Part shown: one piece after another, positions 42,231 through 61,758 of the stretch
Numbering within the stretch: the first letter of the stretch is position 1
How the letters are laid out: every line of letters begins with the position of its first letter
NCBI GenBank assembly: GCA_001179505.1
Contig: CDMY01000234.1
Coordinates: 62,001-126,000 of the forward strand
DNA length: 64,000 nucleotides
Direction of reading: 5' to 3'
Source: Vitrella brassicaformis CCMP3155
Lineage: Eukaryota > Protista > Chromerida
Translations under genes and position numbers: made by a program
Notes under the pieces: generated by a model
What the model was told of the DNA's origin: nothing
The model's database searches: none
Seen by the model: only the letters and a program-made list of their open reading frames with translations

Positions 42231-43560
42231 GAGATTGCTCCAGCACCCCCTGATGGGCTGATCACTAATGGCGATGCTGCCAGTGCGAGGGGCCGGGGGA
42301 CAGGGAGGGGGCGGGGAGCTGGGACACACCTGAGCTACGAGGGGGAGGATTGAGGTGTGCGAGAGTGTGGCCTCGCCTGCTTTTTTCGGCGGTTCCTCCC
42401 GTGTGGTTCCATGCGGTTGACGTTTGTGGTTGCATTTTTGTCGATACCCAGACTGACACATGCTTTTCGTGAATGAGTGACTGACTGACTGGTTCAGGCC
42501 AATCTTCTTGGCGTGTCTCCCCTTGATGCCTCCACGCATTCACACAGCCGGTCATTCACACCAACTACACAATGATGTGACCGGCCGCAATGATGTGCGT
42601 CGGTGTCTGCTGTGAGTTGGACATTACGTTGCAATAGGCGCGATTTGTGAGCCAAAGCTGAGCGCACGGCCCTGAGTGTGCGGCATTGTTGGGTCCCTGC
42701 AGTCAGAAGGCTTGCATCGATGGAATGCGTCCGGATGGCGCTGCGCCGGTCGGGTCACGTCGATAGAGGGCGCTGGGGCCCTCGTTGCGTGTTGCTACAG
42801 TAAGTATCGCTTAAAGCAATCACCGCATAAACCAATCATTTCTGTAAAGCAATCACCCCGCCCCGATCACTCTGTACACAGTCAAAATGCATCGCATAAA
42901 CCAATCACCTCCCAAAGAGACTGAAATCAGCCATTCGGGCCGACCATTCATGGCTCAAAATGACAGCCAGAAAATGAAGCACCACTCTGTGAAAGAGCGG
43001 ACCGATGAAACAGTCGATGAACGGAGAAATACAGACATTTTGATGGTCATCCACCGAGATGAACCATTTTCGATGATGATTTCCGACGAGAGAATCACAA
43101 TGTAAACGGAAGAGCATTCTGTCACTCGCGCAGCAATGACGGCGCCACTGTGACGATCAACCGAGTCAATCGAGTCATTCAATGCATCCGATGACATCTA
43201 CCCAGCCGCACACACGTTTGAGCGACAAAGAGTGAGCAGCACGCCTTCTCCCCACGCGAGNNNNNNNNNNNNNNNNNNNNNNNNNNNNNNNNNNNNNNNN
43301 NNNNNNNNNNNNNNNNNNNNNNNNNNNNNNNNNNNNNNNNNNNNNNNNNNNNNNNNNNNNNNNNNNNNNNNNNNNNNNNNNNNNNNNNNNNNNNNNNNNN
43401 NNNNNNNNNNNNNNNNNNNNNNNNNNNNNNNNNNNNNNNNNNNNNNNNNNNNNNNNNNNNNNNNNNNNNNNNNNNNNNNNNNNNNNNNNNNNNNNNNNNN
43501 NNNNNNNNNNNNNNNNNNNNNNNNNNNNNNNNNNNNNNNNNNNNNNNNNNNNNNNNNNNN

Positions 43561-44741
43561 CCAGCCACCCGCCACATCGCAGCGCACCATGGTGCGCCAA
43601 CCGTACCAAGATCGGCCAGCCGAGACGCTCGATCGACCACGCCACCGCAAGCCGTCAAAAAGGAAGCTGGAGGCCGACGGAGCTGACGGCTCAGATGACG
43701 ATTATGCAGCAGCCATGGCAGCAGCGGCACACCAGCCAGCGCCGCAGCCCAAGAGCAGACCCAAGAGCAAGGCCAAGGGCAAGGCCAAAAGCAAGGCCAA
43801 GGTGACGGCTGGGCGGCGCCAACAGCTGAAGGGGATGAGCGAGAGGAGGATCGCACCGTCGATGACGAGGAAACCATACAGGTACACACAAAAGGAGAAC
43901 ACAATCACACACATGGAAACAATGGATGGGCTTCTTTTTCTCATATAGGCCTTCTCACTTCAGGGGGTTCCGTTGGGCGAGAAGCTTCTCGCAGAACTCA
44001 AATGCTGCCGGTTGCAGGTGGTGTGGGCTTGGACGACATCGCAGATGAGATCGAGCAGGAGCGAGGTCTCCAGACCCGTTTGGCGATGAGCGAATCAGCG
44101 GCCATCGCATTCGGCAAGAGTGGGGAGATGCCCAAGGAGCCGACAGCCGACTTTGAAGACGAGGAGGCCGACACCAATGCCGCTGTTGATAAAGGTAGGT
44201 GGGAGCAGCACGAGCAACAGATACCAGCACACGCCACGTTGCGCGTGCTGCTCCTTCCAGTTGTTGTTGGTGATGCGCAGGCCGCCATGAGGGGGATGGC
44301 GGCCGTCGAGCGCTACGTGGGTGCCCACTGTTCGTTACGGCTTCAGAAAGCACTCGGACGACTGAAGAAAGGAATCAGGACAGAAGCACAACAGAAGGGA
44401 CACCTCAAGCGTGCTCAGTGACTGAGTTTGAGTGAGTGAGTCGTGCTGCCGTACCTCATCTTGGCAGATCTGTCGTTCATGGCTCTGCATCGTTGGTGCA
44501 TGACTCTGTCCATCCATACATCTACTTTTTTGGTGAGATCGGCGCTAGTTTGCCTCACAGGAAGGCCACCATCTGCCGCTGACATCCTCAAAAGTGACTG
44601 AAAGGCTCCAGAAATCACCCTCACGAGCGATCGGCAACCTTTTCCGTAAATCCATATCATCCATGGTTTTCCGTCGTTTCAGGGTCGTTTGAGCGGGGAA
44701 AAAAGAGTCAATGTGATGGAGGGTGGCTCTGGTGAGTCATT
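43561..44741 (+). repeat. Copy 1 of a ~1.18-kb diverged direct duplication carrying the 3' exons of an unknown gene
   Basis: Aligns by eye with 45925-47115 up to ...GGTGAGTCATT. Encodes KRKLEADGADGSDDD, KAKGKAKSKAK and LDDIADEIEQERGLQTRL...AAMRGMAAVERYV...KGHLKRAQ*. Confidence 0.85.
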
Positions 44742-45442
44742 AACGGCGAGAAACCCCGCAGAAAACAAACAGCAGGTAAAGCAATCATTGCCTTGTTCGC
44801 ATAAACCCATCAAATCCATAAAGCAACTGTGCGAAAAGGCCGGTGAGGACCTTTCCTGTACTTAGCTGAATAGAGGATCTGCTGGGCGGTAAGTCCCAGA
44901 GTAAGAGTGCTTTTACTTTAATAAGACCGATGGACTGGCCAGTCAGTCAAAGTTGTTTCTGTCCATGTGTGGCATCATGAAGGGTGGTCAACACAGATCT
45001 CACTTCGGTGATGGCTGATAAGATCGTGTCTCCTCAGAATGCTTTCCTTGTCTTTCCTTGTCTTCTCATCTCTCCACCCGTTACACAGCAATATACCCTA
45101 GCTCACAAGCTCGCAGTGGTTCGTCTTGCCAAGCTGGCAATCCTGACACCCCCTCTCAAGACGAACCATCACGGCGTGTACTCAGGAAAAGAAAATCACG
45201 AAGAAAGCACAAAGGCATCCAGAAAATGACCATTGGGTAGCGAACGCGCACACACAGTGGACAAGTGCACAGATCAGCATAAGCATGAGCACGAATGGTG
45301 TGGTGTGTGCACAGATGGAACAGTTACAGCATATCACAACACATCCACGATGGCCTTCCTTCCCAAGTGACCACAACACACCAAGGAGGTACACAGATGC
45401 AGACTCATTCATCCCTTGTTGCCCTTCCACGTTTCAACAAAC

Positions 45443-45624
45443 TCACTGCCATCTAACCCTGCCTGTAACTCTCTCACTCAGGTACTTGTGCGCTTCACGC
45501 CCAAGTCCCTTCGTGAGTATGTCAGCTATGTTCTCACTGGTACGTACGTATCGAACAGCGAGAAAGCCTGACTGAACTAGCTGACGTATGTAGTGATAAC
45601 GCACGTCAATGTGTTTCGTTCTGT
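45443..45624 (-). mobile_element. Ty1/copia LTR retrotransposon, 3' end of pol (RNase H); 5' part lost in the gap
   Basis: RTKHIDVRYHYIRQLV...VRYVRTSENIADILTKGL is the copia RNase H C-terminal signature. TGTTGAAAC begins 3 nt after the stop codon (45439, minus strand), a possible LTR start. Confidence 0.92.
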
Positions 45625-45924
45625 NNNNNNNNNNNNNNNNNNNNNNNNNNNNNNNNNNNNNNNNNNNNNNNNNNNNNNNNNNNNNNNNNNNNNNNNNNNN
45701 NNNNNNNNNNNNNNNNNNNNNNNNNNNNNNNNNNNNNNNNNNNNNNNNNNNNNNNNNNNNNNNNNNNNNNNNNNNNNNNNNNNNNNNNNNNNNNNNNNNN
45801 NNNNNNNNNNNNNNNNNNNNNNNNNNNNNNNNNNNNNNNNNNNNNNNNNNNNNNNNNNNNNNNNNNNNNNNNNNNNNNNNNNNNNNNNNNNNNNNNNNNN
45901 NNNNNNNNNNNNNNNNNNNNNNNN

Positions 45925-47115
45925 ACCCAGCCACCCGCCACATCGCAGCGCTCAATGGTGCGCCAACCGTACCAAGATCGGCCAGCCGAGACGCTCGATC
46001 GACCACGCCACCGCAAGCCGTCAAAAAGGAATCTGGAGGCCGACGGAGCTGACGGCTCAGATGACGATGATGCAGCAGCCATGGCAGCAGCGGCACACCA
46101 GCCAGCGCCGCAGCCCAAGAGCAAACCCAAGGGCAGACCGAAGGGCAGAGCGAGGGTGGCGGCCAGGCGGCGCCAGCAGCTGAAGGGGATGAGCTAGAGG
46201 AGGATCGCACCCTCGATGACGAGGAAACCATACAGGTACACACAAAAGGAGAACACAATCACACAAATGCAAACAATGGATGGGCGCCTTTTTCTCATAT
46301 AGGCCTTCTCACTTCAGGGTGTTCCGTTGGGCGAGAAGCTCAATTTGAGTGCCCTCATCTGACTTGGACCTCTCCATGCTGCCGGCCGCAGGTGGTGTGG
46401 GCTTGGACGACATCGCAGCTGAGATCGAGCAGGAGCGAGGTCTCCAGACCCGTTTGGCGATGAGCGAATCAGCGGCCATCGCATTCGGCAAGAGTGGGGA
46501 GATGCCCAAGGAGCCGACTGCCGACAGTGAAGTCGAGGAGGCCGACACCAATGCCGCTGTTGATAAGGGTAGGTGGGAGCAGCACGAGCAACACATACCA
46601 GCACACGCCACGTTGCTCGTGCTGCTCCTTCCAGTTGTTGTTGGTGATGCGCAGGCCGCCATGAGGGGGATGGCGGCCGTCGAGCGCTACGTGAGTGCCC
46701 ACTGTTCGTTACGGCTGCAGAAAGCACTCGGACGACTGAAGAAAGGGATCAGAACAGAAGCACAACAGAAGGGAGACCTCAAGCGTGCTCAGTGACTGAG
46801 TTTGAGTGAGTGAGTCGTGCTGCCGTACCTCATCTAGGCAGATCTGTCGTTCATGGCTCTGCATCGTTGGTGCATGACTCTGTCCATCCATACATCTACT
46901 TTTTCGGTGAGATCGGCGCTAGTTTGCCTCACAGGAAGGCCACCATCTGCCGCTGGCATCCTCAAAAGTGACTGAAAGGCTCCAGAAATCACCCTCACGA
47001 GCGATCGGCGACCTTTTCCGTAAATCCATATCATCCATCGTTTTTCGTCGTTTCAGGGTCGTTTGAGCGGGGAAAAAAGAGTGAATGTGATGGAGGGTGG
47101 CTCTGGTGAGTCATT
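45925..47115 (+). pseudogene. Copy 2 of the 1.18-kb duplication, with a nonsense change
   Basis: AGC GAG AGG in copy 1 reads AGC TAG AGG at 46192-46200; numerous other substitutions and small indels. Confidence 0.65.
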
Positions 47116-47128
47116 CAGGGGCTCGTCG

Positions 47129-48506
47129 CATTTGCGAGCTTGACTGAGAATTTTTGTGGCGAGAATGGCGGCGAGATGTCAGATCATAGCCGTCTCCGAG
47201 ACAGATTTGTGAGAATAAGGGATATCAAACAGTTTCCGAGCCGGCTGCCCTCATTTCTCACTGTTTGCCCCACATCTCCCTCGTTTCTTTTCATTTTTTG
47301 GCGGGAGTGGTCGCGCGCCACCCGCCCGAGGCCCACGCAGCCCACGCAGCCCACCCTGCTCCCCGTTTGCGAAGAGGACGAGTCCACCTGATCGGCCCTG
47401 ACCCTCCCGTCAGACGCTGACATCACCCTGATGCGCATCTTGCATCCCATTTCCTCTTTCCGTCCCAGAGCCTCCCGGCGCAATGTAGTCGTCTGCCTGG
47501 CCTTCCCAAGGCACCCACTACTGCGTCCGCCGTCTGCAAGGTCCCCAAGTACAGCGCCGGGGCGACCGATGATGCAGACCCGTCGTCATTCTTCTGGGTC
47601 TTCGAGGCCAAGGCGCCGCACGGCGAAGGGTCGGACTTCAGACGGCGCCTTGCCAACGACACGCGAGCGCTGCTGGGCGAGGAGGTGCCCATCGAGTACA
47701 TGTCGGAGGAGCAGGCTGAGGGAACACACCTGCCACGGCTGCCTAACCCGCCGGTCACGAACCTTGACCGGACGCATCCATCCATCCATCCATCTATCTT
47801 TTGTGTGTGTGTCTGTGTGTATGTGTGTGCAGGAGGCACTTGCGGCTGGGGCTGCTGCTGCTGCTGATGGTGGTGGTGGTGATGATGACGATGGCAACGA
47901 GGATGAAGTCGAGGACGAGGAGGAGGTCAGCGGAGAGAGATGGGATAGGATAGGATGGGATGGGATGGCACACATGCGCTCTTGCGTGCGTCGTGTGTGT
48001 CGATCTGTGTGTGAATGGGCGTGTGTGTATGGTGACAGGATAACGACGACAAATACGAGGACGAGAAGGTCAGCCAGACACCTCACGCACCGAACCATGC
48101 ACCCTTGACATCCCCCTCCCTCTCTGTGTGTTGAATGAGTGCAGGCGGTCAAGGCCAAGTCGAAAGCCAAGCGAGCGGCCAAGCGCACCGATGACCCAGG
48201 TAACTGCCGACTCAGAAAGAACTGATGCTTGCAGCAATGAGAGACATGCACACGTGTGTGTGTGTTTGTGTGAAAGAGTGGAAGCCCAAATGCCTTCGCG
48301 AACAAGCCAAGGGCCTCCCCAAGCACTTCACAGCCAGAATATTTCATTTTGTATTTTGTTAGACTGCTTTGCAGCTATCTATGGGTATTGTCCATGTGTG
48401 TTCGCAGTACCAGAGTGACGTCCGGGGCGTCTCTTACAAGAAAAGAGACCACTCCTGGATCGCGACCTGGTACGAGTGGGGCCGGCCAAAGTGCGCCAGG
48501 TTCTGG
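47129..48506 (+). CDS. AP2-domain gene copy A: unknown N-terminal exon + acidic/Lys linker exons + truncated AP2 exon (48408-48506)
   Basis: Exons VPKYSAGATDDADPSSFFWVFEAK..., DDDDGNEDEVEDEEE, AVKAKSKAKRAAKRTDDP, YQSDVRGVSYKKRDHSWIATWYEWGRPKCARFW. The AP2 helix is missing. Confidence 0.7.
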
Positions 48507-49224
48507 GTGGGGGGCATCACCCAGACAGACAGACAGACAGAGAGATGGGTGTCGTGTGATGCGGATGAGTCCACGCAAGACACACCTCCATGTGCAGAGT
48601 CGGAGAGACACGCAGGGCGCCCCTCACCCTGTGCGGCAGCGGCAGCGGCAGGCGAGGAGACCATGGGAGAGGCAGACCAATCAAACGGACAGGTGGACTT
48701 GACTGACACACGACGCCGATAGGTCACATCGCACAATCATGTTGTGCCTTGTGTCTCGTGTCGTGTGTGTTTTGTGTGGTTAGGATGAGTCGGTTAAGGA
48801 CGGTGACGAGGGCATGGGTGTGGTCAAGGCCAACACACACCATCAGACAGACACGCACCCTCCCTCTCCGTCCCTCTTTCCGTGCCCACCAACACCAACC
48901 TGCCCGCTCAGTATATTGAGCTGGCCTCGGTGCAAGCCCCAGTCGCGCAGGAGGAAGCGACGAGGGGAGAAGGGCCTCTGGGGATGGCTGCGGCTCCTTG
49001 TGGTGCTGGGCGATTGAGACTTCCCCCAGCGGCAGCAGCAGCAGCAGCAGCAGCAAGAGCTCGATGTCCTCAAAGTCCGTTCTTGAGAACACGAATGAGA
49101 ACAGTAAGACATGTCTGTCCACACAGATGTCGACACTCACGAATGGGAACACAGCGAGAAACGTGTGTTTTCACCTCTTTTTGCGCATCTGTCTGTCCGC
49201 GTGTGTGTTGATTCTACGATCAGA

Positions 49225-51060
49225 GGTCTAAGGCCCACCTGGTGGACAAGCTAGAGCGCGAGCTGCGCATCCTCAGCAACCAGGTCAGGTTCGTCCTCGC
49301 CGTCGTCAACGAAGAACTCGAAATCCGCAACCGGTCGGTGGGTCCTCATCCACCACACACACACACGGACGGGCTCACCTGCACATGGGTTGATGTAATG
49401 TGTGTGTGTGTGTGTGTTTGTCGGTTATCAGGAAGCGTCAGTTGCTGTTGGACGAGCTGCACAACTTGGGGTTCGACGCCATGAGTGCCATCCTGGAGGG
49501 GGCCCACAAGGGGCCCGAGGGCGACGTCCCTGACCCCGACCAAGTAGACAAGGAGGTCGGTGCACCACCCACCCTCCCACACACACCAACCACACACAAA
49601 GCCAGACAGGCAGCTGTGTGTGTCATTGTGCTTGTGCTTGTGATTGTGTGTGTTGTGTGCTTAGGATGAGTCGGTTGAGGACGGTGACGAGGGCATGGGT
49701 GTGGTCAAGGACAAGGACTACGGCTACCTCCTCGGCATGGCCATGTGGAACCTTACACAGGAAAAGGCAAGCCACGCCATCCACACAACCACACACACAC
49801 ACCATTAGACAGACGCCCAGTCTCTCTCTCCGTCTCTCGCTCCGTGTCTGTGTGTGTGTGTGAGTAGTCAGAGGAGTTGCGCAAGCAGAAGGGCTACAAG
49901 GAGACCGAGCTCGACACGCTCAGGAAGACCACCGAGCACCAGCTGTGGGAGAAGGACCTCGACGCCCTCGATGAACAGGTAAGGTACCCCCTCCCTCCCT
50001 CCCTCCCTCCCTCCCTCCCCCACACACATACATGTGTGTGTGTGTGTCTGTGTGTGTGGTGTGTGGTTGTCAGGATCGCATTGACGAGGACGATCCCGCA
50101 GCCGAGTTGAACGGGAAGAAGGGCAAGCGCAAGAAGGTCATGTTCTCACGGCCCAAGGGCAAGGCCGCCAAGAGACGCTTCCCCGCCGCCAACAAAGCCA
50201 GGGCCAAAGCCGCCAGAGCCAAGAAGAACAAGGTCGATGGCGTAAGCAAGCCCGTACACCCATGCATATCCTCCCACGCACACATACACACATGGATGCA
50301 TATGTGCAGACATTTATATTCTGTCTGTCTGCTTTTCTGTGCGCGTGTGTGTCTGTGTGTCTCAGTTCACGGATTTCAGCGACAGCGACGAAGAAAACCA
50401 GCTACTCTGTAGTCGCCTCCCTGACCCTCTGGCCAATGTCAGCTTCCAATCCATCCATCCATCCATCTATCCTCTGTGTGTGTGTGTGTGTGTGTGCGTG
50501 TGTGTTCGACAGGGGCAGGATGGCGGCAAGGACAAGGAGAAGGAGTCGAGTGAGGAGAGAGACGCCCACATGAAGCTCGTCGACGCCGACGACGACCATG
50601 ACGACGACCATGACGATGACATGGGGCAGGGGGCTGGTGCTGCTGCTGGTGGCGGCAAGGCGGCAAAGGCCAAGGCCAAGGCCAACGACAAGAAGGAGCA
50701 GCACAAGAAGGACAAGCGCGAGTCTCTCCTCGACGACAAACTAGTACACACACAACACACACACAGTCCACACACAAAGTGCAGGTGTGCCTCCCTCTCT
50801 CTCTCTCTCTCTCTGCGTGTGTGTGTGGTCAGTTCGCTGACGATGACGATGAGGATGTCGACGAGGACCAAGACGGGGACGAGGAGAGTGAGGAGGTCAG
50901 AAAATAGAAAGAAAGAAAGAAAGAAAGAAAGAGAGATGAGATGCCACATACATGCGCTCTTGCAGGCATCGTGTGTGCTGATGCATGTACATGTGACATC
51001 TCATTTCCTCTTTCCGTCCCTCCCGGTGCAGCCGGCTAAGGACGATGATCAGAAAGGTAT
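49225..51060 (+). pseudogene. TOP2: 3' fragment of DNA topoisomerase II (end of breakage-reunion domain + acidic/basic CTD), intron-containing
   Basis: AHLVDKLERELRILSNQVRFVLAVVNEELEIRNR|KRQLLLDELHNLGFD, DYGYLLGMAMWNLTQEK|SEELRKQK..ELDTLRKTTEHQLWEKDLD. No ATPase, TOPRIM or catalytic-Tyr exons upstream. Confidence 0.85.
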
Positions 51061-51168
51061 GCGCCCATCGATGCTTGCAGCAATGAGAGACATGCACATG
51101 TTTGTATGTGTGTGTTTGTGTGAAAGAGTGGACGCCAACATGCCGGCGCCGACAAGCCAAGGGCATCC

Positions 51169-51470
51169 CCGAGTTGCAAACGGGGACGTTGGTACATCTG
51201 ATGCTCGAAAAGAGCGTCTGGTAAGTGCAGGAAGGGCGAGGAGAGAGGGAGACGGAAAAGGGTTCACCCTCATCGCATCGATGTGTGTCTCGCCCCTGCA
51301 GGTTCGTGATTGTCACGAATGTGGGCCAGTTGCCTGTCGGATTGCTGGCTGACCTCACCCACGACCCTCGCTCCAAAATTGCGGTCATTGGTACAGATGC
51401 GTAGCAGAAAGATCGATCGGGCGCTGCCTCTTTTTGCCACTGTACTCGCTGTCTCTTGCAACAACGAGGA
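51169..51470 (+). pseudogene. Inverted partial duplicate of the NYN-like exons at 55520-55830
   Basis: Near-identical to the reverse complement of ~55520-55830 (FVIVTNVGQLPVGLLADLTHDPRSKIAVIGTDA*), with a 15-nt in-frame deletion and the downstream acceptor CAG changed to CAA. Confidence 0.85.
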
Positions 51471-52183
51471 GCGACTACGAGGAGGACCAGCAGCAGAAGA
51501 AGAAGAAGGCCAAGGAGAAGAGAGAAGACAATGCGGGCCGTTCTTTTGTTGTGTGTCAGATCGGCTGCTCATCGCTGCCTGCATTTTATATCCTGATGTC
51601 TCATCCGCTCGCTGACCGTCTCGTATGTGTGTCGTTCGTGCCGTATTGGCCTGTTTGATTATTCGAACCTTTTACGTCCGTGATCTGCATGGCACGTGGT
51701 TGGTTGGTTATTGTGTTTAATGAGACTCGTGTCTGTAACCCCGGAGGGGATCCTGTCCATTTCACGCACTAAAATAGCAACATCCTCATGGATAGAAGCA
51801 TGCACACGGTTTATCTACCCATCCCACCCACCCACCCACCCACTCGACATGCACGTGCCACCCTATGACGGTCAGAAGACAGCCAGACATATGCATCACG
51901 CACAGAGGCTACTTTCATATACCAATTCGTCGTCTGCCCCTGAATTCAATCCTCCTGGTTCACACGAAGCGGGACACCCCGCCCTGACTCTCGGACGCGA
52001 TCGGGGAGATCATTCACTGGATCTTCATCAAGATGATGAGTCACGTCATGCAGATCTTGCTCGGATGCGACGAATTGAGTCCTGTGATGGCTTCTCTGGA
52101 CGGCAACGAGTGCAAGCGCAAGAAGGTCGGCTTCGTGCCGCCTAGAGGGGCCAATTGAAAGCCTCCTAGGATGTCCATCTGCG

Positions 52184-52223
<40 letters not shown>

Positions 52224-53808
52224 TGGAGTAATGGAGACACCACCTTTGGTTGACACCTTAGCCTGCTTGGAGAAGATGGATGCAATCAAGCGCACAGCTG
52301 AATGCCAAGTGTCAATGTCTCATGCACCACTTCCGTCCATCCATCCATCCATCGATCTATCCGTCGGTCCATCGATCACCACACCCGTCCATCTACCCAC
52401 CGCTGCACTCAAACTAACGACCCCAGCCAGCCAGCCCGCCTCTCTGTGATCTTCGTCTTTCTTCCTTTCTCGTGGTGCGGACCACCAGACAGCCAGCCAG
52501 ACAGCCGCACAGACGCAACCGATCTTCTCTACTCTGCAAGTAGGTCAAATGCAAGGCACGCACCAGGCAGCCACGCAGTCAGTTTGGACACACAGACACA
52601 CTCTTCCTAAGAGTGTCCACCGAGAGGAAGTGTCTCAAGCCCACCACAGGCACAGAGACACCCGCGAAAGTGCGCGATGGGCCAGCAGCAGACAATGGCA
52701 GCCAGCCAGCCAGCCAGCCAGGTGAAAGACATAAACACTGATAGACTAGATGAGTGTGTGTGTTTTTGTGTATGTACGCCCGGTGCCGAACTCAGACCCC
52801 ATCGCCTCTCGTCACACGCGGGCTCTCTGGACCTCTGCGACGTACCAGAGACATTCCCGCTCGCAAGTGTGCGCTTCGAGAGGAAAGGCCCCAAGCCCAC
52901 CACAGAGGGAGAGAGACACCCGCAAAAATGCGCGAGGGGCCAGCGGCAGACAAATCCAATTGTGGTATGTCGTATGTGATGGTGGGAAAAAAACTACGAG
53001 CGGAGTGATAGCGAGCGAGAAGGGGGGACGGGTGAACGGACATGGACACACTACTGACAGACAGACAGACAGACAGACACGATTAGAAAATATATCGCGC
53101 GGGTGCACCGTTGTGCGCATCTCTCTCTTCATTCCTCCCAGCGACCGACACACAGACAGACAGGGAGGTGATGATGATGGCATGGTGGTACGAGAAATGT
53201 GTGACGTGTGTCTGTGTGCAGGCAGGCAGGTAGGCAGGCAGGCAGGTAGGTAGGCAGGCAGGCAGCGTAGCAGCAGCCTATCCACCCATGCACTCCTCCT
53301 CCATCCATTCCACCCACCCAGCCGTGACGCAAAAGACCTGACTACCACGTTTGCCTCTTCACCACTGAGTGCACACGCATTCGTGTTAGTTAGTTATGTG
53401 CCGTGGAAGTGGTTGCTTGATTGACTGACTGGTGGTGGGGAAACAAGGAAGCGCTTGTGTGTGTGTGTGTGTGTGTGTGCGATGAATGTGTGGGCAAAAG
53501 GCGTGTTGGGACACAGACAGAACACACAGCACAATCAGCCAGACGTGTCCACAGTGACACCCCCAGACAGGCAGACAGACAGACAGTCGGGCAGTCGGTC
53601 GGTTGGCACCACATGCCGTCACCACGGGGAATGGTGGACAGGGGTGGCGGGCAGGCAGGAAGGCCGACTCTCTCCCTTGACCATCTATCCATCCGTCTGT
53701 TCAGCACAAGACACCGTAGGCAGCCAGGCAGGCAGGCAGGCAGACAGTCAGCAGATACAGGCCTCTCTCTCGTCGTAACCCTCACTCACCGTCCAGCCGT
53801 CCGTGAAC

Positions 53809-54171
53809 TCATCGAGAGTGCTTCTGTCGGTGTGCGATGGCGCTCGCCTATTATCATGCAAAGAGAAGAGGCACGCAAATTGAAGAGGCCGGCTGGCGTC
53901 TCTATCACGTGGGCTGTGTTGTTGGCAAACTGACCTTTGCCCGGGCGAACCCAAGTGCCTTGATCGAGAAAAGCTTGTACCTGCGCCGGCCGCTCTCGTA
54001 CCAGGTGGCCATCCAGCCATGATCTTTCTCCTTGTAGGTGACTCCACGAACGTTGCTCTGATACTGCGAGCACACACACACAGATGGCTGCGAGGCAGTC
54101 TAACAAAATACAAGATGAAATACCTTCACCTTCTTGGCCTGCGTGCATGTGTGTGTAGGGGTCCAGTCTCC

Positions 54172-54206
<35 letters not shown>

Positions 54207-56338
54207 TGTGTGTGCATGTCTGTCATTGCTGCATGAGTAGGCACATACCGTCCTCGTCCTCGTCATCGCTGTTTTTGTGTGTGCGCTTGGCCGCCTGCAC
54301 TCATTCGACACACAGGGAGGGAGTGAAGGAGTGGGCTGTCACATGTGCATCGCTGGTCTGTGAGATGTGGCTGACCTTAGGTTTCGGTTCGTAGTTCTCG
54401 TCGTCATCCTGCCACTATACACACACATCAACACACAAGATACATGCAAGAGCGCATGTCGCATCCCATCCCATCTGTCTGTCTGTCTGTCTCTGTCTCT
54501 CTCTGGCTGACTGACCTCCTCCGTCTCCCCATCTGCGTCTTCATCCTCGTCTTCGTCGTCGTCTTCATCCTCGTCGTCCTCGTCGTTTTCGTCGTCCTCG
54601 TCGGGGTACTGACAACACACACACATCACACCCCCCAGGAAAGAGGGAGACAGCGAGGCACACATGCACTGTGTGCCTTCTCTGTGTGTGGTAAATGGTG
54701 TGAATGGTGTGAATGTGTGTGTACCAGGTCATCTTGGACGAGCGATTTGGCCTTGGTCTTTCCCTTGGCAGCCGCCGCCGCCGCCGCCGCTCCGAGCTCC
54801 TCATCTGACATACGTGTGCACATGTGTGCTCATTTATCAGCTCTCCGAGCTGGCACGTACCTGTGGCGGTCCACCTGATGCACCTCGCCTGCTGGCCGGC
54901 CCCTGTCACTGTAGTTATCTCATAGCGACCTCCACTGTCGCAGTCGCTCTCACGCACGGCGTCCAAGAGCTTCTTCAGCTCAGCAGCTTCGTCCGGCTTG
55001 AAGTTCTGATGGTTTTGGTGGTGTGGGGGGGCCAGGACCTGTCGTTGGTGAGGGGAGCAGCGGGGCCGAGTCTGATCTGCGGGTGGCGGCTGAACACACT
55101 GACACACACGCCCACAGAGAGAGAGAAAGAGAGAGAGCGACGAGTGCGTGAGAGGGTGTGTGTGTGTGTGTGCGTCTGCGTCTGCGTGTGTGTGTACTGA
55201 CCTCCTGTGGTTTGCCCCTGATGTCATTGCCCAGGGAGGACATCTCGAGGTCGGCCACCTTGGCTCCGCGGCCGGCGGGTGTGACAGTGTTGTTCTCCTG
55301 TCGGGCCCCGGGAGGGCCGGTGATTTTCTTGTTTGTGAGTTGCTTGGTCTCGTCCAGGTGGAAAATCTTATACTTGGGCGTGGCATTGGGATCTGAGGCA
55401 TAGCAAGAGAAACACAGGCCGGCATATGACAGCTTTTTGCAATGAGTCGCTCAGTGGATACTATACCATCAGAGGCGCTGCTGCTGCAGCTGAGTGAATG
55501 TGATCCATTGGTGTCCAGGCCTGCAAAAGACAGCGAGTACAGTGGCAAAAAGAGGCAGCGCCCGATCGATCTTTCTGCTACGCATCTGTACCAATGACTG
55601 CAATTTTGGAGCGAGGGTCGTGGGTGAGGTCAGCCAGCAATCCGAGAGGCAACTGGCCCGCATTCGTGACAATCACGAACCTGCAGGGGCGAGACACACA
55701 TCGATGCGATGAGGGTGAACCCTTTCCCGTCTCCCTCTCTCCTCGCCCTTCCTGCACTTGCCAGATGCCCTCCTTCTTTTCGAACTTTTCCAGCATCAGA
55801 TCTAGCAACGCCCCCGTGTGCAGCTCTCCGCCGACGGTAGCGTGATGAAACATAAGCTGCACCTCATTACTGCCCCCCCAAATGGCCTCGCAGATGTCCC
55901 GCAGCACATTGGCCGCACCACACACACCGTCGACAGGCCGTACTCGTGGCTGGAAGGGCTGCGTGGCTCTGTCGAACGTGGCGATGTGTGTGTTGATGGT
56001 CTTCTCGACGAGACGCTCCACTGCGATGGCGTCTTGGGGGGTGGAACGGACGACAACAAGGTCTCCACAGTTCACACGGGAGCACCTGCGACGCACACAG
56101 GCAAAGGCAGGCCTCATTTTGGGGGCGACTGAGAGAATGCACATGCCACGCAACCACCACTGAAGAGAGCGTCCACAGTGTCATGCATCGTGGAACGCGT
56201 GACACCCATGAGACGGTAGGCACCCCCGAGGCACAATAGAGCCGCTCAATGCGCATGAGGTTGCGGGAGTGTGCGGAGGAAGAAGTGGTGCATTTCCCGT
56301 GGGGCTCACCGTTCTATGATGGCTCGAAGGTCTTCCAT
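53809..56338 (-). CDS. AP2-domain gene copy B, apparently intact: degenerate NYN-like domain + possible R3H-like segment + acidic linker + complete C-terminal AP2 domain
   Basis: I could chain about 12 exons in phase from MEDLRAIIER to YQSNVRGVTYKEKDHGWMATWYESGRRRYKLFSIKALGFARAK|ASAIAHRQKHSR*. AP2 exon is 53935-54063. The AP2 call is strong; the NYN and R3H calls are pattern-based. Confidence 0.7.
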
Positions 56339-56531
56339 GACGTCTGTCGGGTGGGGAAGACTCCGAACTTCTCCCCCCTTCCCGCACTTCTTAGCTCGCA
56401 CGATCGGCAGCCTCCCCATCTGAAGGATATGATGTCGCTGGATCTTCATCAAGGTGATGAATCACGTCATGCAAATCTTGCACGGATGCGACTAATTGAG
56501 TCCTTTTCTTCTCGCAGGTGAGATGTGAACG

Positions 56532-57771
56532 ATGGGCAATACCCTCGCTGCATTCGCGCCAACTCAGCCACTCCCTCATCATCGCCCTCCCTTCGTCAGA
56601 CCTCTCGTTCAGCCTCTCGCCCGACGGAGGCCCGTGCGGCGCACCGACGCTCCCATCGCATGTGCAGCCTCTCTGGAAGAGCATGAGTGGCGGAGATCTG
56701 CCCGGCGCCACCGAAGGGACGTGCTGGGACTGCTAGGGATGGAGAACGAAGGCGACGAGGTGTCTGTGAAGCTGCACCACGACCCAGCCCATCCCATCTT
56801 CAACTTCATTCTGGAGTATTACGGCTTCAACCACGCTGATCTGCATCGCTACTCGCCTGGCTCGTGCATCTTCCTCCAGGGCGCTCTGGCGGACGATCCC
56901 AGGCTGCACAGAAAAGCATTCGTGGCGGCCGAGGGCGGCGGGTTCTTCGACCCTGGCCTCATCCCAGAGAAGCGCTTGGCGTGGTTCAAGTGGATTGCGG
57001 AGCTGCTGCGGGTGACAATGGACCGTGAGCCGTCATTCAAGTGCTTTGGTTGGAGGACACAAGGCGTGGATGAGAGGGGGAAGGCATGGTTGGGTGTCTG
57101 TCTGCTTGTGCGCAGGTCTTCACGAGTGGGCGATGCTGTATCGCCCGGCTGCAGATGAGGACGCGCCTGTCAGCCGGTTCCAACAACTGCGACTGCGACT
57201 CAGCCAACAAGAGCTCAACATGGTAGGTGCTAAAGTGACCCGCCCCAACACAACACAACACAACACAGACATCACAATGCCGATGTGTCCATGCTCTGTG
57301 TGGGCGCAGGTCGTTGAGGCCGGCCTGCTTTCGTGCACTCACTATGACGCCTCGCGCCACTTCCCACACTCCGCCCTCCCCCTCAACGCCATCCAGCCGC
57401 CGCCATCCAAGTCAAGACGGCTCAATTTGGAACAACCTGGGTGCGTCCACACCAACATGGACCTCTTCAAGTGGGCCGTCAAGGCCGTCCCATTCATCCC
57501 CAGCGACATCGTCCGGGAGGCCCTCAGCATTGCCATCGAGGCGCGGGTCCTGGACATGCGTGCGAGTCCGTATGACCTGACCAAGGTGTCTCTGCAAAGG
57601 GGCTCGGCGGACTTTGATGCATCGCCTGTGAGGGTGGAGACGGCTGGAGGGCGGGAAGACTATCAGCTGATGCAGTGGGCGATACATCGGAGGGCGAAGC
57701 CTCTTCGCGAGCGGCTGCTACACCATTACGAGAAGATGCTGACCGACGCTGCTGGGCGGAGGAGGCCGTGA
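56532..57771 (+). CDS. Conserved uncharacterised protein of the family commonly labelled '3-methyladenine DNA glycosylase' in actinobacterial annotations; Arg-rich N-terminal extension
   Basis: HPIFNFILEYY, SFKCFG|LHEWAMLYR, LRLRL, CTHYDA, LEQPGCVHTNMDLFKWA, RVLDMRASPYDL, PVRVETAGGR..Y..Q..R.KPLRERLL. Confidence 0.8.
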
Positions 57772-58835
57772 TTGATGTGTCTATTGAGTGGTCGGAAGAT
57801 GTGTGTTTGCTATATTGAAGCTGCGTGGAGAGTGTCGATATCAGCGTGGCAGCTGCATGCACGTGAGTGAGATGGACGGAGGCGATGGGACCAGGTTGAC
57901 CGACAGATTCATTCAGGCTGTGCATAGTACATTGTTGCGATGTCCTCGATCCCCACTTTATTGGCAAAGAAGAAGAGGTATGATTCAGTAATGGCTGAAT
58001 GCAGCCACTCGACGAGTTACAGTAGTCACCTCTCAATTTGGTGGACTGGGCGGGCGGCATGTGACACGCAGCTATCAAATCACACCTCACAAATGGATCC
58101 ATTCATTCGTTCGCCTGCACTGCCGGTCGGTGCATGTCTGCCCACACGCACATGTACTAGTACTCAACACAACACATCTCACACACGTGTGTCACAGCAA
58201 CACTAGAGTGACCGAGATAGAGGCTAACAGAGATCCGTGGCGAGAATTCGCCTTCTCGACGAGACGCGTGGATTATTCCCGCCATTCCATTTTCCGCATC
58301 GGCTCAAGCTCATGGCCGTTACAACAGCCGTCGGCGCAGGTGCGGCAAGCTTTGCCCGTCGGCCAGTGAAAGCAATCGGCTTCAAGCGGCGCGCGATATG
58401 GCTGCGCTGACCGTATTGCTGAAAGTGTGTGCATGCGAGCGATGCTGGAAGTGGCGGCCGGTATGTGAGATCGCCACAGACGGTGGCTGGCCCGCGGACG
58501 AGGGCGATTCGGTATGAGAAACCACGCTTTCACTCTGCCCTTCTCTCTCTCAGTGCACGTCCCTTCATGTACATGTGTGTGCCAGGCAAGCGATCGAAGA
58601 AGCGAAGCGCAGGGGGGCCAAGCTCTCATTGCCCACGGCCAAGGCCGCCAAGGGCCGCCTCAGCCATCAACAAAGCCGAACCCTACAAGAAGGTAGACGA
58701 CGACGTGAGCAAGCCAGACGTCCATCCTCCCCTTGCTCATCCACCCACACACATGGATGCACGCATACACGCACCTCCGTGTGTGTGTGTGCGTGTGTGT
58801 GTAGAGGAGTACCTGCCGACACACGGGGGGATCTG

Positions 58836-60510
58836 CATTTGCGAGCTTGGCTGAAAATTTTTGTGGCGAGAATGGCGGCGAGATTTCAGATCATAGCCGT
58901 CTCCGAGACAGATTTGTGAGAATAAGGGACATCAAACAGTTTCCGAGCCGGCTGTCCTCATTTCTCACTGTTTGCCTCACATCTCCCTCGTTTCTTTTCA
59001 TTTTTCGGCGGGAGTGGTCGGGCGCCACCCGCCCGAGGCCCACGCAGCCCACCCTGCTCCCCGTTTGCGAGTCCACCTGACCGCCCCTGAACCTCCCGTC
59101 AGACGCTGACATGCCCCTGATGCGCATGTTGCATCCCATTTCCTCTTTCCGTCCCTCCCGGCGCAATGTAGTCGTCTGCCTGGCTTTCCCAAGGCACCCA
59201 CTACTGCATCCGCCGTCTGCAAGGTCCCCAAGTACAGCGCCGGGGCGACCGATGATGCAGACCCGTCGTCATTCTTCTGGGTCTTCGAGGCCAAGGCGCC
59301 GCACGGCGAGGGGTTCAGACGGCGTCTGGCCAACGACACGCGAGCGCTGCTGGGCGAGGAGGTGCCCATCGAGTACATGTCGGAGGAGCAGGCTGAGGGA
59401 ACACACCTACCACGGCTGCCTAACCCACCGGTCACGAACCTTGACCGGACGCATCCATCCATCCATCCATCTATCTTGTGTGTGTGTGTGTGTGTGTGTG
59501 TGTCTGTGTGTATGTGTGTGCAGGGGGCACTTGCGGCTGCGGCTGCTGCTGCTGCTGATGGTGGTGGTGATGATGATGATGACGATGGCAACGAGGATGA
59601 AGTCGAGGACGAGGAGGAGGTCAGAGGAGAGAGATGGGATGGGATGGGATGCCACACACATACGCTCTTGCGTGCGTCGTGTGTGTCAATGTGTGTGGGT
59701 AAATGGGCGTGTGTGTTTGGCGGCAGGATAACGACGACGAATACGAGGACGAGACTTCCAAGAAATCCAAGGTCAGCCAGACACCTCACGCACAAAACAA
59801 TGCACCCGTGACATCCCCCTCCCTCTCTGTGTGTTGAATGAATCAGACGGCAAAGGCCAAGCGCACCGATGACCCAGGTTACTGCCGACTCAGAAAGAAC
59901 TGATGCTTGCAGCAATGAGAGACATGCACACGTGTGTGTGTTTGTGTGAAAGAGTGGAAGCCCAAATGCCGCGGCCCACAAACCAAGGGCCCCCGCAAGC
60001 ACTCTAAAGCGAGAGTATTTCATTTTGTATTTTGTGAGACTGCAGTCTTTGCAGCTATCTGTGTGTATTGTCTATGTGTGTTCGCAGTATCAGAGTGGTA
60101 AATCGGGAGTGCTCTACCACGAGAAAGACAACGCCTGGATCGCCAAGTGGACCGAGAGGGGCCGGTACCGCTACAAGTCGTTCTGCATCAATTCACTTGG
60201 GTTTGCCGACGCGCTGGTCAGTTTGCCAACAACACAGCCCACGTGATAGAGATGCAAGCCGGCCTCTGCAACTTGCGTGCCTCTTCTCTGTGATCAGTTC
60301 GCTGACGATGACGATGAGGATGTCGACGAGGACCAAGACGGGGACGAGGAGAGTGAGGAGGTCAGAAAGAAAGAACGAGAGAGATGGGATGCCACATACA
60401 TGCGCTCTTGCACGCATCGTGTGTGTTGATGCATGCACATGTGACATTTCATTTCCTCTTTCCGTCCCTCCCGGTGCAGCCGGCTGAAAACGAGGATCCA
60501 GAAGGTATGC
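58836..60510 (+). CDS. AP2-domain gene copy C (paralog of copy A), AP2 exon 60088-60216, followed by TOP2-CTD-type acidic exons
   Basis: 58836-~60030 aligns with 47129-~48330. AP2 exon YQSGKSGVLYHEKDNAWIAKWTERGRYRYKSFCINSLGFADAL. 60295-60510 matches 50830-51070. Confidence 0.7.
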
Positions 60511-60599
60511 GCCCATCCGTGGATGTGTTTTGGCGCGTGCGACCAACTCAGTGCTAAAATCGCACCCAATAACATCACCTGGTGCACGGGTTTCTGGCC

Positions 60600-61758
60600 A
60601 ACCAGAGTCGGGTTATTTCGGTGGCAGCAAATACATCGAAGCTCATGAGGTGGAGGTGCTGCATGCGCTGTCGACACGAGCCACGGAGCCCGAAGAACCT
60701 ATCACAACGACAGTCGCACCTGCATCGACGACAAACGGCTCTGCGTCACCGCTGAATGGCTCGTCCCTGTCAGCATCAGAATATGAGGGCCTCCGTGGCC
60801 TCCTGGGTGACAACAAGAACCTGACTTCGATCTACCGGTATGGCTGTCGGTCCAGACGGGTGCAGCCATCTAGGCCACAGACACGCGTGTGTATATGATG
60901 GCTGTGTGTCTGTGTGTCTGATTCGCCGGACTTGTGTATGTGTGTGGCTGGCAGGTCGTCTGTGCACACTGATCTGCTCGGCCGCTTGCGCGCGACACGT
61001 GGTGATTGGTCGGGCGGCCGTGGGTGGCCCTGGTGATGAGACGTGAGACACACAGCTCTCTTGGATGGACTCCGCTTTGCCGTCTCGTGTATGCCTCAGC
61101 TGGGTGGTCTGGCTGGTCTGGCACATACACCCACTGGGTGTTCCTTGTCCGCAACGCCCCGTACGTGTTCGGCGCCTATATCAGAGACCACAAATATACA
61201 GGCGTCGTAGACTCTATCTTGGACGGCCAAAGTAGCGAAGGATATTTCGAGCTTGGGGAAGATGATATGTGGCACTTCTCACTGGCGGGCCACTTCGATG
61301 GGCCGACAAAAATTCGCCCACCACTTTGGGTCGAAAACTACGGCACGGCCTACTTGGGAGTTGATACTAGACAAGTTAACATTCAGCTAACGGTGCGCTG
61401 GGAAACATCAACCTGCAGTGGGTTGAGCTTTACTGTTGGTGAGAAAGGACATGAAGGGTATGGGACGGACATCGATTATTCTTGTTTGCGGGGTGATTCT
61501 GCCGATGTTCGCCGAAGCCAATTTAGCATCCATCGTAAGCGTGTGCCTGAGGACTACAAGGGGGTGAGGAGCGACTTGGGCGATGCTTATCTTGGCGGCG
61601 CGCTCGCCTTCACGGCTGATGAGGTGGAGGTGCTGTATTTGCTGGAGGAGGACCCTTTACCTGCACTGGATAGCAGTGGGGGGACAAGTATGAAGGGGTG
61701 GTCACTGTGGGGCGGGGTGATGATGGCGATGCTCATCTGCCAGTGGGTGGCCATGTGA
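60600..61758 (+). CDS. TLDc-like domain protein (end of one repeat + one full repeat) with hydrophobic C-terminus
   Basis: YFGGSKYIEAHEVEVL; SLSASEYEGLRGLLG..LTSIYR; YVFGAYI; WHFSLAGHFDGPTKI; VPEDYKG..LGGALAFTADEVEVL; tail WSLWGGVMMAMLICQWVAM*. No own start codon located. Confidence 0.55.

What the first reader, a model, noticed from the sequence alone, without database searches (positions are those of the whole stretch)
47129..61758. ApiAP2 exon-shuffling hotspot: one AP2 exon cassette, three different gene contexts
Seen: three paralogous AP2 exons (48408+, 54063-, 60088+), each preceded by a homologous intron (..TATTTCAT(T/C)TTGTATTTTGT..AGACTGC..TCGCAG|TA(C/T)CAGAG) and by homologous acidic and Lys/Ala linker exons. 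Upstream partners differ (unknown domain in A and C; NYN-like in B). Downstream partners differ (TOP2 fragment after A, normal helix + stop in B, acidic exons + TLDc-like after C). Further duplicated pieces: 47129-48330 = 58836-60030; 48740-48830 = 49630-49710; 50830-51070 = 60295-60510; 51169-51470 = rc 55520-55830; 52018-52085 = 56440-56505; 50160-50300 ~ 58640-58770. All retain introns, so the mechanism is DNA-level, not retroposition. Known: ApiAP2 is the main transcription-factor family of apicomplexans and chromerids. Inference: a nursery producing new AP2 domain architectures, by Helitron/Pack-type capture or repeated ectopic recombination.
Basis: partly seen in the sequence, partly recalled or inferred. 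Interest (0 to 1): 0.8.

Follow-up and report, generated by a model that had tools for sequence, protein, structure and literature searches.

The report
Reshuffled AP2 gene copies in Vitrella
In the alga Vitrella brassicaformis, a 15-kb stretch holds three copies of one AP2 DNA-binding exon set in different genes, showing exon shuffling by DNA duplication and recombination. Only two copies give full-length gene models and none is shown to be expressed.

Summary

- **Copy B** (minus strand) gives an open 12-exon, 524-aa hand model. It has an N-terminal domain, a KPDE motif, a linker, a complete AP2 domain and a stop. The annotated AP2 protein CEM16954.1 has the same layout, so this is probably the ancestral one.
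- **Copy C** is the annotated protein CEL95645.1, an intact 11-exon chimera. Its parts are a repeat-derived first exon, an exon fragment captured from a gene on scaffold C158, linker exons derived from the TOP2 tail, an AP2 exon without its helix exon, and a TLDc-like C-terminus.
- **Copy A** is a 5' partial copy of C that breaks off inside the AP2 exon. It lies beside transposon debris and a TOP2 3' fragment that appears to evolve neutrally. The RNA-like contigs examined hold nothing of it.

The mechanism is DNA-level duplication and ectopic recombination or gene conversion. I found no Helitron or MULE signature.

One feature is unexplained: introns are better conserved than exons across the copies.

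The scan has noted other AP2 fusions elsewhere in this genome; I did not check them. Expression of B and C is untested.

The parts
43561..47120 (.). Nest of transposon-type repeats abutting copy A. It comprises a low-copy 1.2-kb repeat pair (43561-44741 and 45927-47115, 93% alike) and a young high-copy element (44828-45624). Two 300-N gaps lie at 43261-43560 and 45625-45924.
   Evidence: 44828-45624 has more than 40 genomic copies at 95-99% identity. The minus-strand ORF ending at 45443 reads like the C-terminus of a Ty1/copia pol protein; this is from my own knowledge, and Pfam gave no hit.
47128..48485 (+). Copy A, a 5' partial paralogue of gene C. Exons by homology: 47165-47208, 47489-47753 (U), 47833-47925, 48039-48068, 48145-48199, 48277-48338 (KR, donor GT changed to AT), and 48408-48485 (first 26 codons of AP2).
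   Evidence: The reading frame stays open (287 aa if read on to the stop codon ending at 48722). RNA-like runs X1, X2 and X8 have zero depth over copy A, 47101-48500.
48486..49217 (+). Patchwork downstream of copy A. 48505-48770 copies an intron of a gene on scaffold C242 (77%). 48742-48884 is a truncated copy of a TOP2 exon and the intron after it.
   Evidence: DNA contigs of run X3 bridge 48281-48826 and 48804-49351 without any difference.
49218..50760 (+). TOP2 3' fragment: the last five core exons (49224-50252) and charged tail exons. It copies C234:10461-8830, about 100 kb upstream on the same scaffold.
   Evidence: 86% identity over 1080 columns. The parent gene carries PF00521 exons just upstream, at C234:11381-12186. 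Exons are intact: pS 0.104, pN 0.047, ratio 0.45; introns 84%. RNA-like contigs give no real cover.
50824..51531 (+). Mosaic block D. Acidic exon and small exon as found after the AP2 exon in C (50824-51069); intron end and KR exon as found before the AP2 exon (51070-51173); second half of copy B's N-domain exon, fused in frame inside the exon (51171-51460); a further TOP2-tail piece (51464-51531).
   Evidence: An X3 DNA contig bridges 51008-51252.
51697..51877 (.). Dispersed repeat of about 180 bp.
   Evidence: More than 40 copies at 86-91%. No tRNA or Rfam match.
52005..52083 (.). Copy of the 5' region of gene B (56425-56504).
   Evidence: 89% identity.
53809..56449 (-). Gene B, hand model of 12 exons with GT-AG borders and an open 524-aa frame. 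Exons: 56449-56310, 56085-55592 (N-domain), 55520-55467, 55392-55202, 55089-54861 (KPDE motif), 54804-54725, 54608-54516, 54408-54376, 54294-54249, 54170-54124 (KR), 54063-53935 (AP2), 53847-53809 (helix and TGA stop).
   Evidence: The AP2 exon scores 39.6 bits against PF00847, above the 33.3-bit cut-off (place C234:115935-116054). The same N-domain, KPDE motif and AP2 order occurs in P0032/CEM16954.1.
58429..58712 (+). Relic exons upstream of gene C's annotated start: a KPDE-like exon (58429-58515) and an exon resembling the last core TOP2 exon (about 58596-58712).
   Evidence: 76% to 50115-50199; 73% to the parent TOP2 gene.
58872..61758 (+). Gene C, which encodes CEL95645.1 (P0005, 519 aa), with 11 GT-AG exons. 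Exons: 58872-58915 (inside repeat R), 59172-59430 (U), 59524-59619, 59727-59771, 59847-59877, 59953-60014 (KR), 60088-60216 (AP2, no helix exon), 60298-60360 (acidic), 60480-60504, 60606-60837, 61185-61758 (TLDc-like).
   Evidence: AP2 scores 26.5-31.7 bits, below the cut-off. In the U exon the split from A shows 6 synonymous changes and 1 replacement, mostly on the C lineage.
58838..59120 (+). Repeat R, the first 260-280 bp of a dispersed repeat of at least 1.7 kb. It forms the left end of the A/C duplicated block (copy in A at 47131-47431) and holds gene C's annotated start codon.
   Evidence: About 20 copies at 77-89% on other scaffolds.
61093..61662 (+). TLDc-like domain of gene C, within the open frame 61006-61758. 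The family consensus begins upstream of the annotated exon start at 61185.
   Evidence: At least 124 family hits in the genome. Two paralogues hit Pfam TLD weakly (E 8.5e-4 and 0.06). AlphaFold model pLDDT 66. The ten best VIA-align rows are all TLDc domains, Z 5.6-7.0, and the next row is 3.8.

Best explanation
This is a small local AP2 gene family that has been repeatedly cut and re-joined at the DNA level. I infer the following sequence of events.

1. **The ancestor.** It was an AP2 gene with an N-terminal domain, a KPDE motif, a small basic exon (KR), an AP2 exon and a helix exon. It took up charged exon-plus-intron modules from the 3' tail of the TOP2 gene, which lies 100 kb away on the same scaffold. 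These modules became its linker.
2. **Local duplication.** This gave three copies.
   - B kept the old layout.
   - In C, the 5' part was displaced by a piece of a dispersed repeat plus a 253-bp fragment of the first coding exon of a gene on scaffold C158. New splice sites were recruited for that fragment. C's AP2 helix exon was replaced, at a TG-rich intron end, by an acidic module followed by exons of the large TLDc-like family.
   - A is a copy of C's 5' half, or was converted by it. It breaks off inside the AP2 exon and is followed by intron and TOP2 debris.
3. **Continuing gene conversion.** Conversion among the modules keeps many introns 87-99% alike while the exons differ.

Shown: the homologies, the joints, the open frames and the domain assignments. 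Inferred: the order of events, the role of gene conversion, and which copies are functional.
For: **The duplication map.**
- DNA contigs confirm the joints at 48485, 49218 and 51070-51171.

**Open frames.**
- C is an annotated 11-exon open frame, all GT-AG.
- B gives an open 12-exon frame of 524 aa.

**Ancestral layout.**
- P0032/CEM16954.1 has the same N-domain (33% identity), KPDE motif and AP2.
- A KPDE-like relic and a TOP2-like exon sit upstream of C.

**TOP2 origin of the linkers.**
- The parent TOP2 gene has PF00521 exons.
- Its tail modules at C234:8080-7753 match C at 80%, A at 77% and B at 71%.

**Source of the U exon.**
- U has three copies in the genome.
- P0151 on scaffold C158 is the source.
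- Homology covers 59189-59441 only.

**Age of the copies.**
- The AP2 exons of A, B and C are each other's nearest relatives in the genome.
- They are nevertheless old, with dS 0.65-1.6.
- A and C are 95-97% alike up to about 48294 and then drop to 81% and 67%. This fits a conversion or duplication tract that ends there.
- Very similar patches (99% over 80 nt; 97% over 250 nt) point to recent conversion.

**The TOP2 fragment.** Its dN/dS against the parent is 0.45.
Against: - No RNA evidence was obtained for B or C. The single read-laying run covered 47101-53100 only.
- The RNA-like contigs did not include the U exon, which A and C share at about 97%. The annotated 5' end of C is therefore unconfirmed.
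- Copy A still has an open frame and only one damaged splice site, so it may not be dead.
- Gene conversion is inferred from identity patterns alone. Constrained introns would explain those patterns equally well.
- The order of events rests on few characters.
- The only DNA check came from short-read contigs that may be the same data from which the genome was assembled.
Confidence: 0.7

Rival explanations
1. Productive nursery. All three copies, and perhaps the TOP2-fragment block, are expressed functional genes. On this view the locus is kept recombination-prone because it yields new AP2 architectures that selection retains.
For: - C and B have long open multi-exon frames.
- A's frame is also open, and every exon indel between A and C is a multiple of three.
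- The U exon shows purifying selection since the A/C split (6 synonymous changes, 1 replacement).
- Exons differ while introns stay alike, as expected if selection keeps the exons distinct against gene conversion.
- Block D contains an in-frame fusion within an exon.
Against: - There is no RNA-like cover on A, the TOP2 fragment or block D.
- No annotated product of A between 285 and 908 aa was found.
- A's AP2 domain is half a domain and one of its donor sites is lost.
- The TOP2 fragment fits neutral drift.
- Indels in multiples of three are expected from slippage in codon-repeat exons, so they are weak evidence.
- Most U-exon changes lie on the C lineage, so nothing can be said about constraint on A.
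Confidence: 0.2
2. Transposon-mediated capture. A Helitron, Pack-MULE or transducing element picked up the AP2 cassette and neighbouring exons and spread them.
For: - The A/C block begins within a few bases of the 5' edge of a dispersed repeat with about 20 copies.
- Copy A abuts a nest of transposon-type repeats.
- A further dispersed repeat lies at 51697-51877.
Against: - The AP2 intron-exon cassette exists only three times, all within this 14 kb.
- No inverted terminal repeats flank any block.
- The shared left end does not begin with TC.
- Subsets of the repeat-R copies also share sequence upstream of that edge, so it need not be an element terminus.
- The pieces have different boundaries in each copy, which does not fit one mobile unit.
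Confidence: 0.06
3. Assembly artefact. The duplicated pieces are collapsed or mis-joined repeats or haplotypes.
For: Two 300-N gaps lie just upstream, at 43261-43560 and 45625-45924. A follow-up note on another stretch of this genome reports a gene wrongly joined at an assembly gap (I did not check it).
Against: - There is no gap inside 47129-61758.
- The copies differ by 3-35%, not by 0%.
- DNA contigs of run X3 bridge the critical joints without any difference.
- Open frames run across the joints.
Confidence: 0.04

Closest known systems
Exon shuffling by intronic recombination and segmental duplication (chimeric genes built from duplicated gene pieces, as in primate duplication-rich regions)
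   Same: Whole exons move together with their flanking introns. Joints lie in introns or at intron ends, and reading phase is kept: C has 11 in-phase exons and B has 12. The outcome is a mix of intact chimeras and dead fragments.
   Different: The scale here is very small, with exons of 30-260 nt and introns of 70-110 nt. Two joints lie inside exons (48485 and about 51150). One captured piece, U, had to recruit new splice sites.
ApiAP2 family expansion in chromerids (Woo et al. 2015, PMC4501334)
   Same: The organism and the family are the same. That paper reports numerous chromerid apiAP2 proteins in paralogous clusters, attributes the expansion to gene duplication, and favours turnover of full-length sequences.
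   Different: The passages I read from that paper give no exon-level mechanism or locus. This stretch shows the intermediates directly: a truncated copy, a swapped 5' end, a swapped 3' end and TOP2-derived linkers.
Primate red/green opsin genes, where introns are homogenised by gene conversion while selection keeps exons different (from my own knowledge, not checked here)
   Same: Between paralogues, introns are more alike than exons: 83-93% against 61-84%. Synonymous sites of the AP2 exon have diverged far more than the flanking introns.
   Different: Conversion tracts were not demonstrated. Several of the exons are low-complexity and may diverge by slippage. Constraint on the introns is an equally open explanation.
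Pack-MULE and Helitron gene-fragment capture in plants
   Same: Gene fragments from several unlinked loci (C158, C242 and the TOP2 gene) are assembled into one transcription unit next to repeats.
   Different: There are no element termini and no target-site duplications. The cassette has no dispersed copies.

Membership tests
AP2 domain (Pfam PF00847, ApiAP2 type) | Match to the domain profile above Pfam's gathering score (33.3 bits) | tested here: met
   Met by copy B only: its AP2 exon scores 39.6 bits, profile positions 2-41 (C234:115935-116054). Copy C scores 31.7 bits as an exon and 26.5 bits as the whole protein, below the cut-off. Copy A scores 23.4 bits over profile positions 2-24 only.
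AP2 domain (Pfam PF00847, ApiAP2 type) | Complete fold: three strands followed by the C-terminal helix | tested here: inconclusive
   B has a separate helix exon (53847-53809) followed by a stop. In C, an acidic exon takes the place of the helix exon. A ends after the second strand. No structure was predicted for any of the three.
TLDc domain (Pfam PF07534) | Profile match above the gathering score (24.5 bits) | tested here: not met
   Gene C's own C-terminus gives no Pfam hit at E up to 1. Two paralogues score 19.7 and 13.7 bits. A family profile finds no TLDc chain in the PDB by sequence.
TLDc domain (Pfam PF07534) | TLDc fold | tested here: met
   The model built from a 23-sequence family alignment has pLDDT 66. 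The ten best VIA-align rows are all TLDc domains (NCOA7, OXR1/2, TBC1D24, mEAK7), with Z 5.6-7.0, rmsd 2.6-4.8 and 102-116 residues aligned. The next row scores 3.8. This is moderate, not strong, support.
Type II DNA topoisomerase (TOP2) | The cleavage-religation core (PF00521) must be present for a complete gene | tested here: not met
   In the window, only exons downstream of the core are present (49218-50760). The PF00521 exons exist in the parent gene at C234:11381-12186 and not here. The window copy is therefore a 3' fragment.
Helitron / Pack-MULE capture | Element termini (5' TC and 3' CTRR with a hairpin, or terminal inverted repeats with target-site duplication) around the captured block | tested here: not met
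   No inverted repeats flank any block; all inverted pairs found are the paralogous arms themselves. The A/C left end does not start with TC. Helitron 3' ends were not searched systematically.
   Neither B's N-domain exon nor its paralogues give any Pfam hit at E up to 1. The structure model is too poor to use (pLDDT 46).
   There is no Pfam or PDB sequence hit. All four aligned family members share a conserved non-Walker motif where a P-loop would sit. The model is unusable.

The most novel reading that the evidence does not exclude
The short introns of the cassette may act as recombination handles. They are kept 83-99% alike across five module copies, including the TOP2 tail 100 kb away, while the exons between them diverge even at synonymous sites. 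Gene conversion and crossing-over in these introns would then let exons be exchanged in phase, while selection keeps the DNA-binding exons distinct. The locus would be a self-maintaining device for building new AP2 proteins. Alternatively, the conserved introns may carry functional RNA or splicing-control elements of an unknown kind.
Probability: 0.2. Interest if true: 0.7.

Novelty: new member of a known kind. Interest (0 to 1): 0.45.

Why it matters
ApiAP2 proteins are the main transcription factors of malaria parasites and their relatives. How the family gained its many lineage-specific architectures is known only in outline, as 'gene duplication and turnover'.

This locus preserves the intermediate steps in one place. 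They include a gene of the ancestral type, a chimera with both ends exchanged, a truncated copy and the leftover fragments. The sources of the borrowed pieces can be named: the TOP2 tail, a gene on scaffold C158, and the TLDc-like family.

It offers a concrete, testable case of exon shuffling in a free-living relative of Apicomplexa. It also raises a specific question: why are the introns better conserved than the exons?

It does not reveal a new kind of mechanism.

Tried and rejected
**Tests of mechanism**
- Helitron or MULE capture: no termini found.
- Ectopic conversion of the AP2 exons from AP2 genes elsewhere in the genome: rejected. A, B and C are each other's nearest relatives (60-61% identity) and the next best are 53-55%.
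- Known RNA families in the conserved introns or the 180-bp repeat: no Rfam or tRNA hit. Consensus folds of the two AP2-flanking introns show no compensatory changes.

**Identity of the partner domains**
- B's N-domain: Pfam, PDB sequence search and the protein atlas gave nothing usable. The AlphaFold model has pLDDT 46, so I did not search with it.
- Atlas search for gene C's C-terminus: no usable hit.
- The copia-like tail, P0151 and the KPDE exon: no Pfam hits.

**Recovering annotated gene models and RNA evidence**
- The look-up of encoding contigs for P0005, to recover annotated neighbours: not on record.
- Searching for an annotated product of copy A: only P0005 and P0151 were found, within the length window 285-908 aa. 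Shorter or longer models were not tested.

**Limits I kept to**
I redid it by coordinates.
- The joined spliced models of A and B were assembled only inside a script to check reading frames. They were not sent to any search or folding tool. Searches were run exon by exon or with the database protein P0005.

Full report
**Origin of the window.** The window is G000:C234:62001-126000 of a 72.7-Mb genome in 1064 scaffolds. The protein encoded at 58872-61758 is CEL95645.1 of Vitrella brassicaformis CCMP3155, on a scaffold of 159,360 bp.

- A = 47128-48485 against C = 58835-60165.
- A and C against the reverse complement of B (53859-54567), at 66-68%.
- 48742-48833 = 49626-49714.
- 50824-51069 = 60289-60517.
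- 51171-51460 = reverse complement of 55522-55826.
- 52005-52083 = 56425-56504.
- At higher sensitivity, 58596-58677 ~ 50115-50199.

The conserved intron motif before them occurs three times in the whole genome and never in the reversed control. No assembly gap lies inside the stretch. DNA contigs of run X3 bridge the joints at 48485, 49218 and 51070-51171 without a single difference. Those contigs may, however, come from the data used for the assembly.

**Copy C.**
- A profile of the three AP2 exons retrieved P0005 (519 aa) from the 1.84-billion-protein library.
- P0005 maps to 11 exons, all with GT-AG borders.
- Exon 1, which holds the start codon, lies inside repeat R. R is the first 260-280 bp of a dispersed repeat of at least 1.7 kb, with about 20 copies elsewhere.
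- Exon 2 (U) has only two relatives in the genome: copy A and the first coding exon of P0151 on scaffold C158.
- Homology to C158 covers 59189-59441 only. It starts 17 nt inside the exon and ends 11 nt past it. Gene C's donor is a GT that is read as a valine codon in P0151. This piece was therefore captured without native splice sites.
- Next come two acidic exons, a Lys/Ala exon, a small basic exon (KR) and the AP2 exon.
- The intron after the AP2 exon is 91% identical to B's. Where B has the helix exon, C has an acidic exon. The joint lies in a TG tract a few bases before the acceptor.
- The C-terminus belongs to a family with at least 124 hits in this genome. Pfam does not recognise C's own copy. 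Two paralogues hit TLD weakly. A model built from 23 family members finds only TLDc domains in its ten best structural matches, with Z 5.6-7.0, and the next row scores 3.8. 'TLDc-like' is therefore moderately supported.
- The family consensus starts upstream of the annotated exon start at 61185, so the annotated model may clip the domain.
- Since the split from A, the U exon has taken 6 synonymous changes and 1 replacement, mostly on the C lineage when polarised by the C158 copy. This points to purifying selection on C.
- C's AP2 exon carries 10 unique residue changes in its first 26 codons and falls below Pfam's cut-off. It is either relaxed or changing function.

**Copy B.**
- Reading the minus strand exon by exon gives 12 exons with GT-AG borders and an uninterrupted 524-aa frame. 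It runs from the ATG at 56449 to the TGA at 53809.
- The frame contains an N-terminal domain, a motif-bearing exon (KPDE), a Lys/Ala-rich exon, the same acidic, Lys/Ala and KR series as in C, a full AP2 exon and a 12-codon helix exon.
- The N-domain has about 11 genomic hits.
- One of these lies in P0032/CEM16954.1, an annotated AP2 protein that also carries the KPDE motif. B's layout is therefore an established architecture and most likely the ancestral one.
- Upstream of C's annotated start, a degenerate KPDE-like exon (58429-58515) and an exon resembling the last core TOP2 exon survive in one open frame. This suggests that C descends from a B-like gene.
- I could not decide what the N-domain is. 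There are no Pfam, PDB or atlas hits, and the model has pLDDT 46. Neither 'NYN-like' nor 'Cdc6-like' is supported here.

**Copy A.**
- A and C are 95-97% identical through repeat R, U, both acidic exons and their introns.
- At about 48294, inside the KR exon, identity steps down. The rest of KR is 64% identical, the AP2 exon is 67%, and the 70-nt intron between them is 93%.
- Homology ends at 48485, after 26 AP2 codons.
- The KR donor is AT instead of GT. A GT 12 nt further on would keep the frame.
- The frame stays open to the stop codon ending at 48722, giving 287 aa.
- Downstream lie a copy of an intron from scaffold C242 and a truncated TOP2 exon.
- RNA-like runs X1, X2 and X8 have zero depth over copy A, 47101-48500. 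Between 48501 and 52290, X1 and X2 contribute only about 20-nt low-complexity matches. X8 shows some depth there, but no matching contig pieces are listed apart from those at the 180-bp repeat. All three runs do cover 52291-53025.
- No annotated product of 285-908 aa shares A's N-terminus.
- A abuts a nest of transposon-type repeats at 43561-47120.
- I read A as a truncated copy that is dead or dying, but this is not proven.

**TOP2 and the linkers.**
- 49218-50252 is an 86% copy of C234:10461-9396, immediately downstream of the PF00521 exons of the scaffold's TOP2 gene.
- Its five exons are intact. They show pS 0.104, pN 0.047 and ratio 0.45, and the introns are 84% identical. This is the ordinary pattern, and the ratio is what one expects if one copy drifts.
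- The parent gene's tail is a run of small charged exons.
- One stretch of that tail (C234:8080-7753: acidic exon, acidic exon, Lys/Ala exon, with their introns) matches C at 80%, A at 77% and B at 71%.
- The linkers of the AP2 genes are thus TOP2-tail modules. This agrees with another first-reader note (s1-218601).
- Block D (50824-51531) strings together an acidic module 99% identical to C's, a KR copy, the second half of B's N-domain exon fused in frame inside the exon, and another TOP2-tail piece.

**Mechanism.**
- Introns travel with the exons, so the events acted on DNA.
- The cassette is confined to this locus.
- No block has terminal repeats.
- Each copy has different boundaries.
- Several joints sit in TG/CA tracts at intron ends.
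- This fits repeated ectopic recombination and microhomology-type joining, not a mobile element.
- Patches of 97-99% identity inside 87-91% surroundings, and the step in the A/C alignment, suggest continuing gene conversion.

**An unexplained feature.**
- In B against C, A against B, and the TOP2 tail against C, every intron is more alike (83-93% of aligned columns) than every exon (61-84%).
- For the AP2 exon this holds at synonymous sites too: dS is 0.65-1.6, against about 0.1 in the flanking introns.
- Other AP2 genes are not the source of this divergence.
- No known RNA family or conserved fold was found in the introns.
- Two readings remain. Either conversion homogenises the introns while selection and slippage keep the exons apart, or the introns themselves are constrained.

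**Comparison with what is known.** Woo et al. 2015 report that chromerid apiAP2 proteins are numerous, fall into paralogous clusters, and expanded by duplication with later turnover. This locus is a worked example at exon resolution, not a new principle. The scan's notes list other AP2 fusions in this genome, with amine oxidases and a demethylase. I did not check them.

**Limits.**
- Expression of B and C was not tested.
- Joined spliced models were used only to check frames in a script and were never sent to a search or folding tool.

Noticed in passing
window 51697-51877: A dispersed repeat of about 180 bp with more than 40 genomic copies at 86-91%. It is hugely over-represented in run X8 (word depth about 9300, against 10-50 nearby) and only about 15-25-fold in DNA run X3. 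It may be an abundant small transcript. No tRNA or Rfam match.
   Followed up: partly
window 52291-53025: The only part of 47101-53100 with real cover in the RNA-like runs X1, X2 and X8. The contigs are contiguous and unspliced, up to 661 nt. It may be the 3' untranslated region of gene B, which ends at 53809 on the minus strand.
   Followed up: no
window 43561-47120: A nest of transposon-type repeats with two 300-N gaps. A 1.2-kb repeat pair is 93% alike. A young element at 44828-45624 has more than 40 copies at 95-99%, many at scaffold ends. Its minus-strand ORF reads like the C-terminus of a copia-type pol protein.
   Followed up: partly
window 54862-55002 (-) and 58429-58515 (+); proteins P0004, P0009, P0013, P0062, P0032: A conserved motif of about 40 residues (the KPDE exon) recurs in several Vitrella AP2 proteins. 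It has no Pfam family and may be an undescribed companion domain of chromerid AP2 factors.
   Followed up: partly
protein P0013 (CEM21216.1), not in the window: An annotated Vitrella protein that combines three AP2 domains with a Tc5/pogo-type transposase DNA-binding domain (PF03221, E 5.6e-7).
   Followed up: no
window 61006-61758 and at least 124 other places in G000: A very large TLDc-like family private to this genome's expansions. It forms clusters on scaffolds C802, C268 and C217. Pfam misses most members.
   Followed up: partly
window 56532-57771 (+): A gene lying head to head with B. Its two long ORFs have no Pfam hit. The 80 bp between the two genes is the piece copied at 52005-52083.
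   Followed up: no
window 39162-40593: A tandem array with a period of about 240 bp. Copies are 74-95% alike.
   Followed up: no
L046 = G000:C334:48000-57999: A second place where an acidic-exon-plus-intron module (79% to 59575-59823) and a fragment of repeat R lie within 3 kb of each other. It may be a similar mosaic.
   Followed up: no
window 55761-55681 (-), inside B's N-domain exon: An 81-nt in-frame stretch with GC-AG borders that may be an optional intron. In block D the matching site has a canonical GTAAGT donor, and paralogues end their exon at this point.
   Followed up: partly
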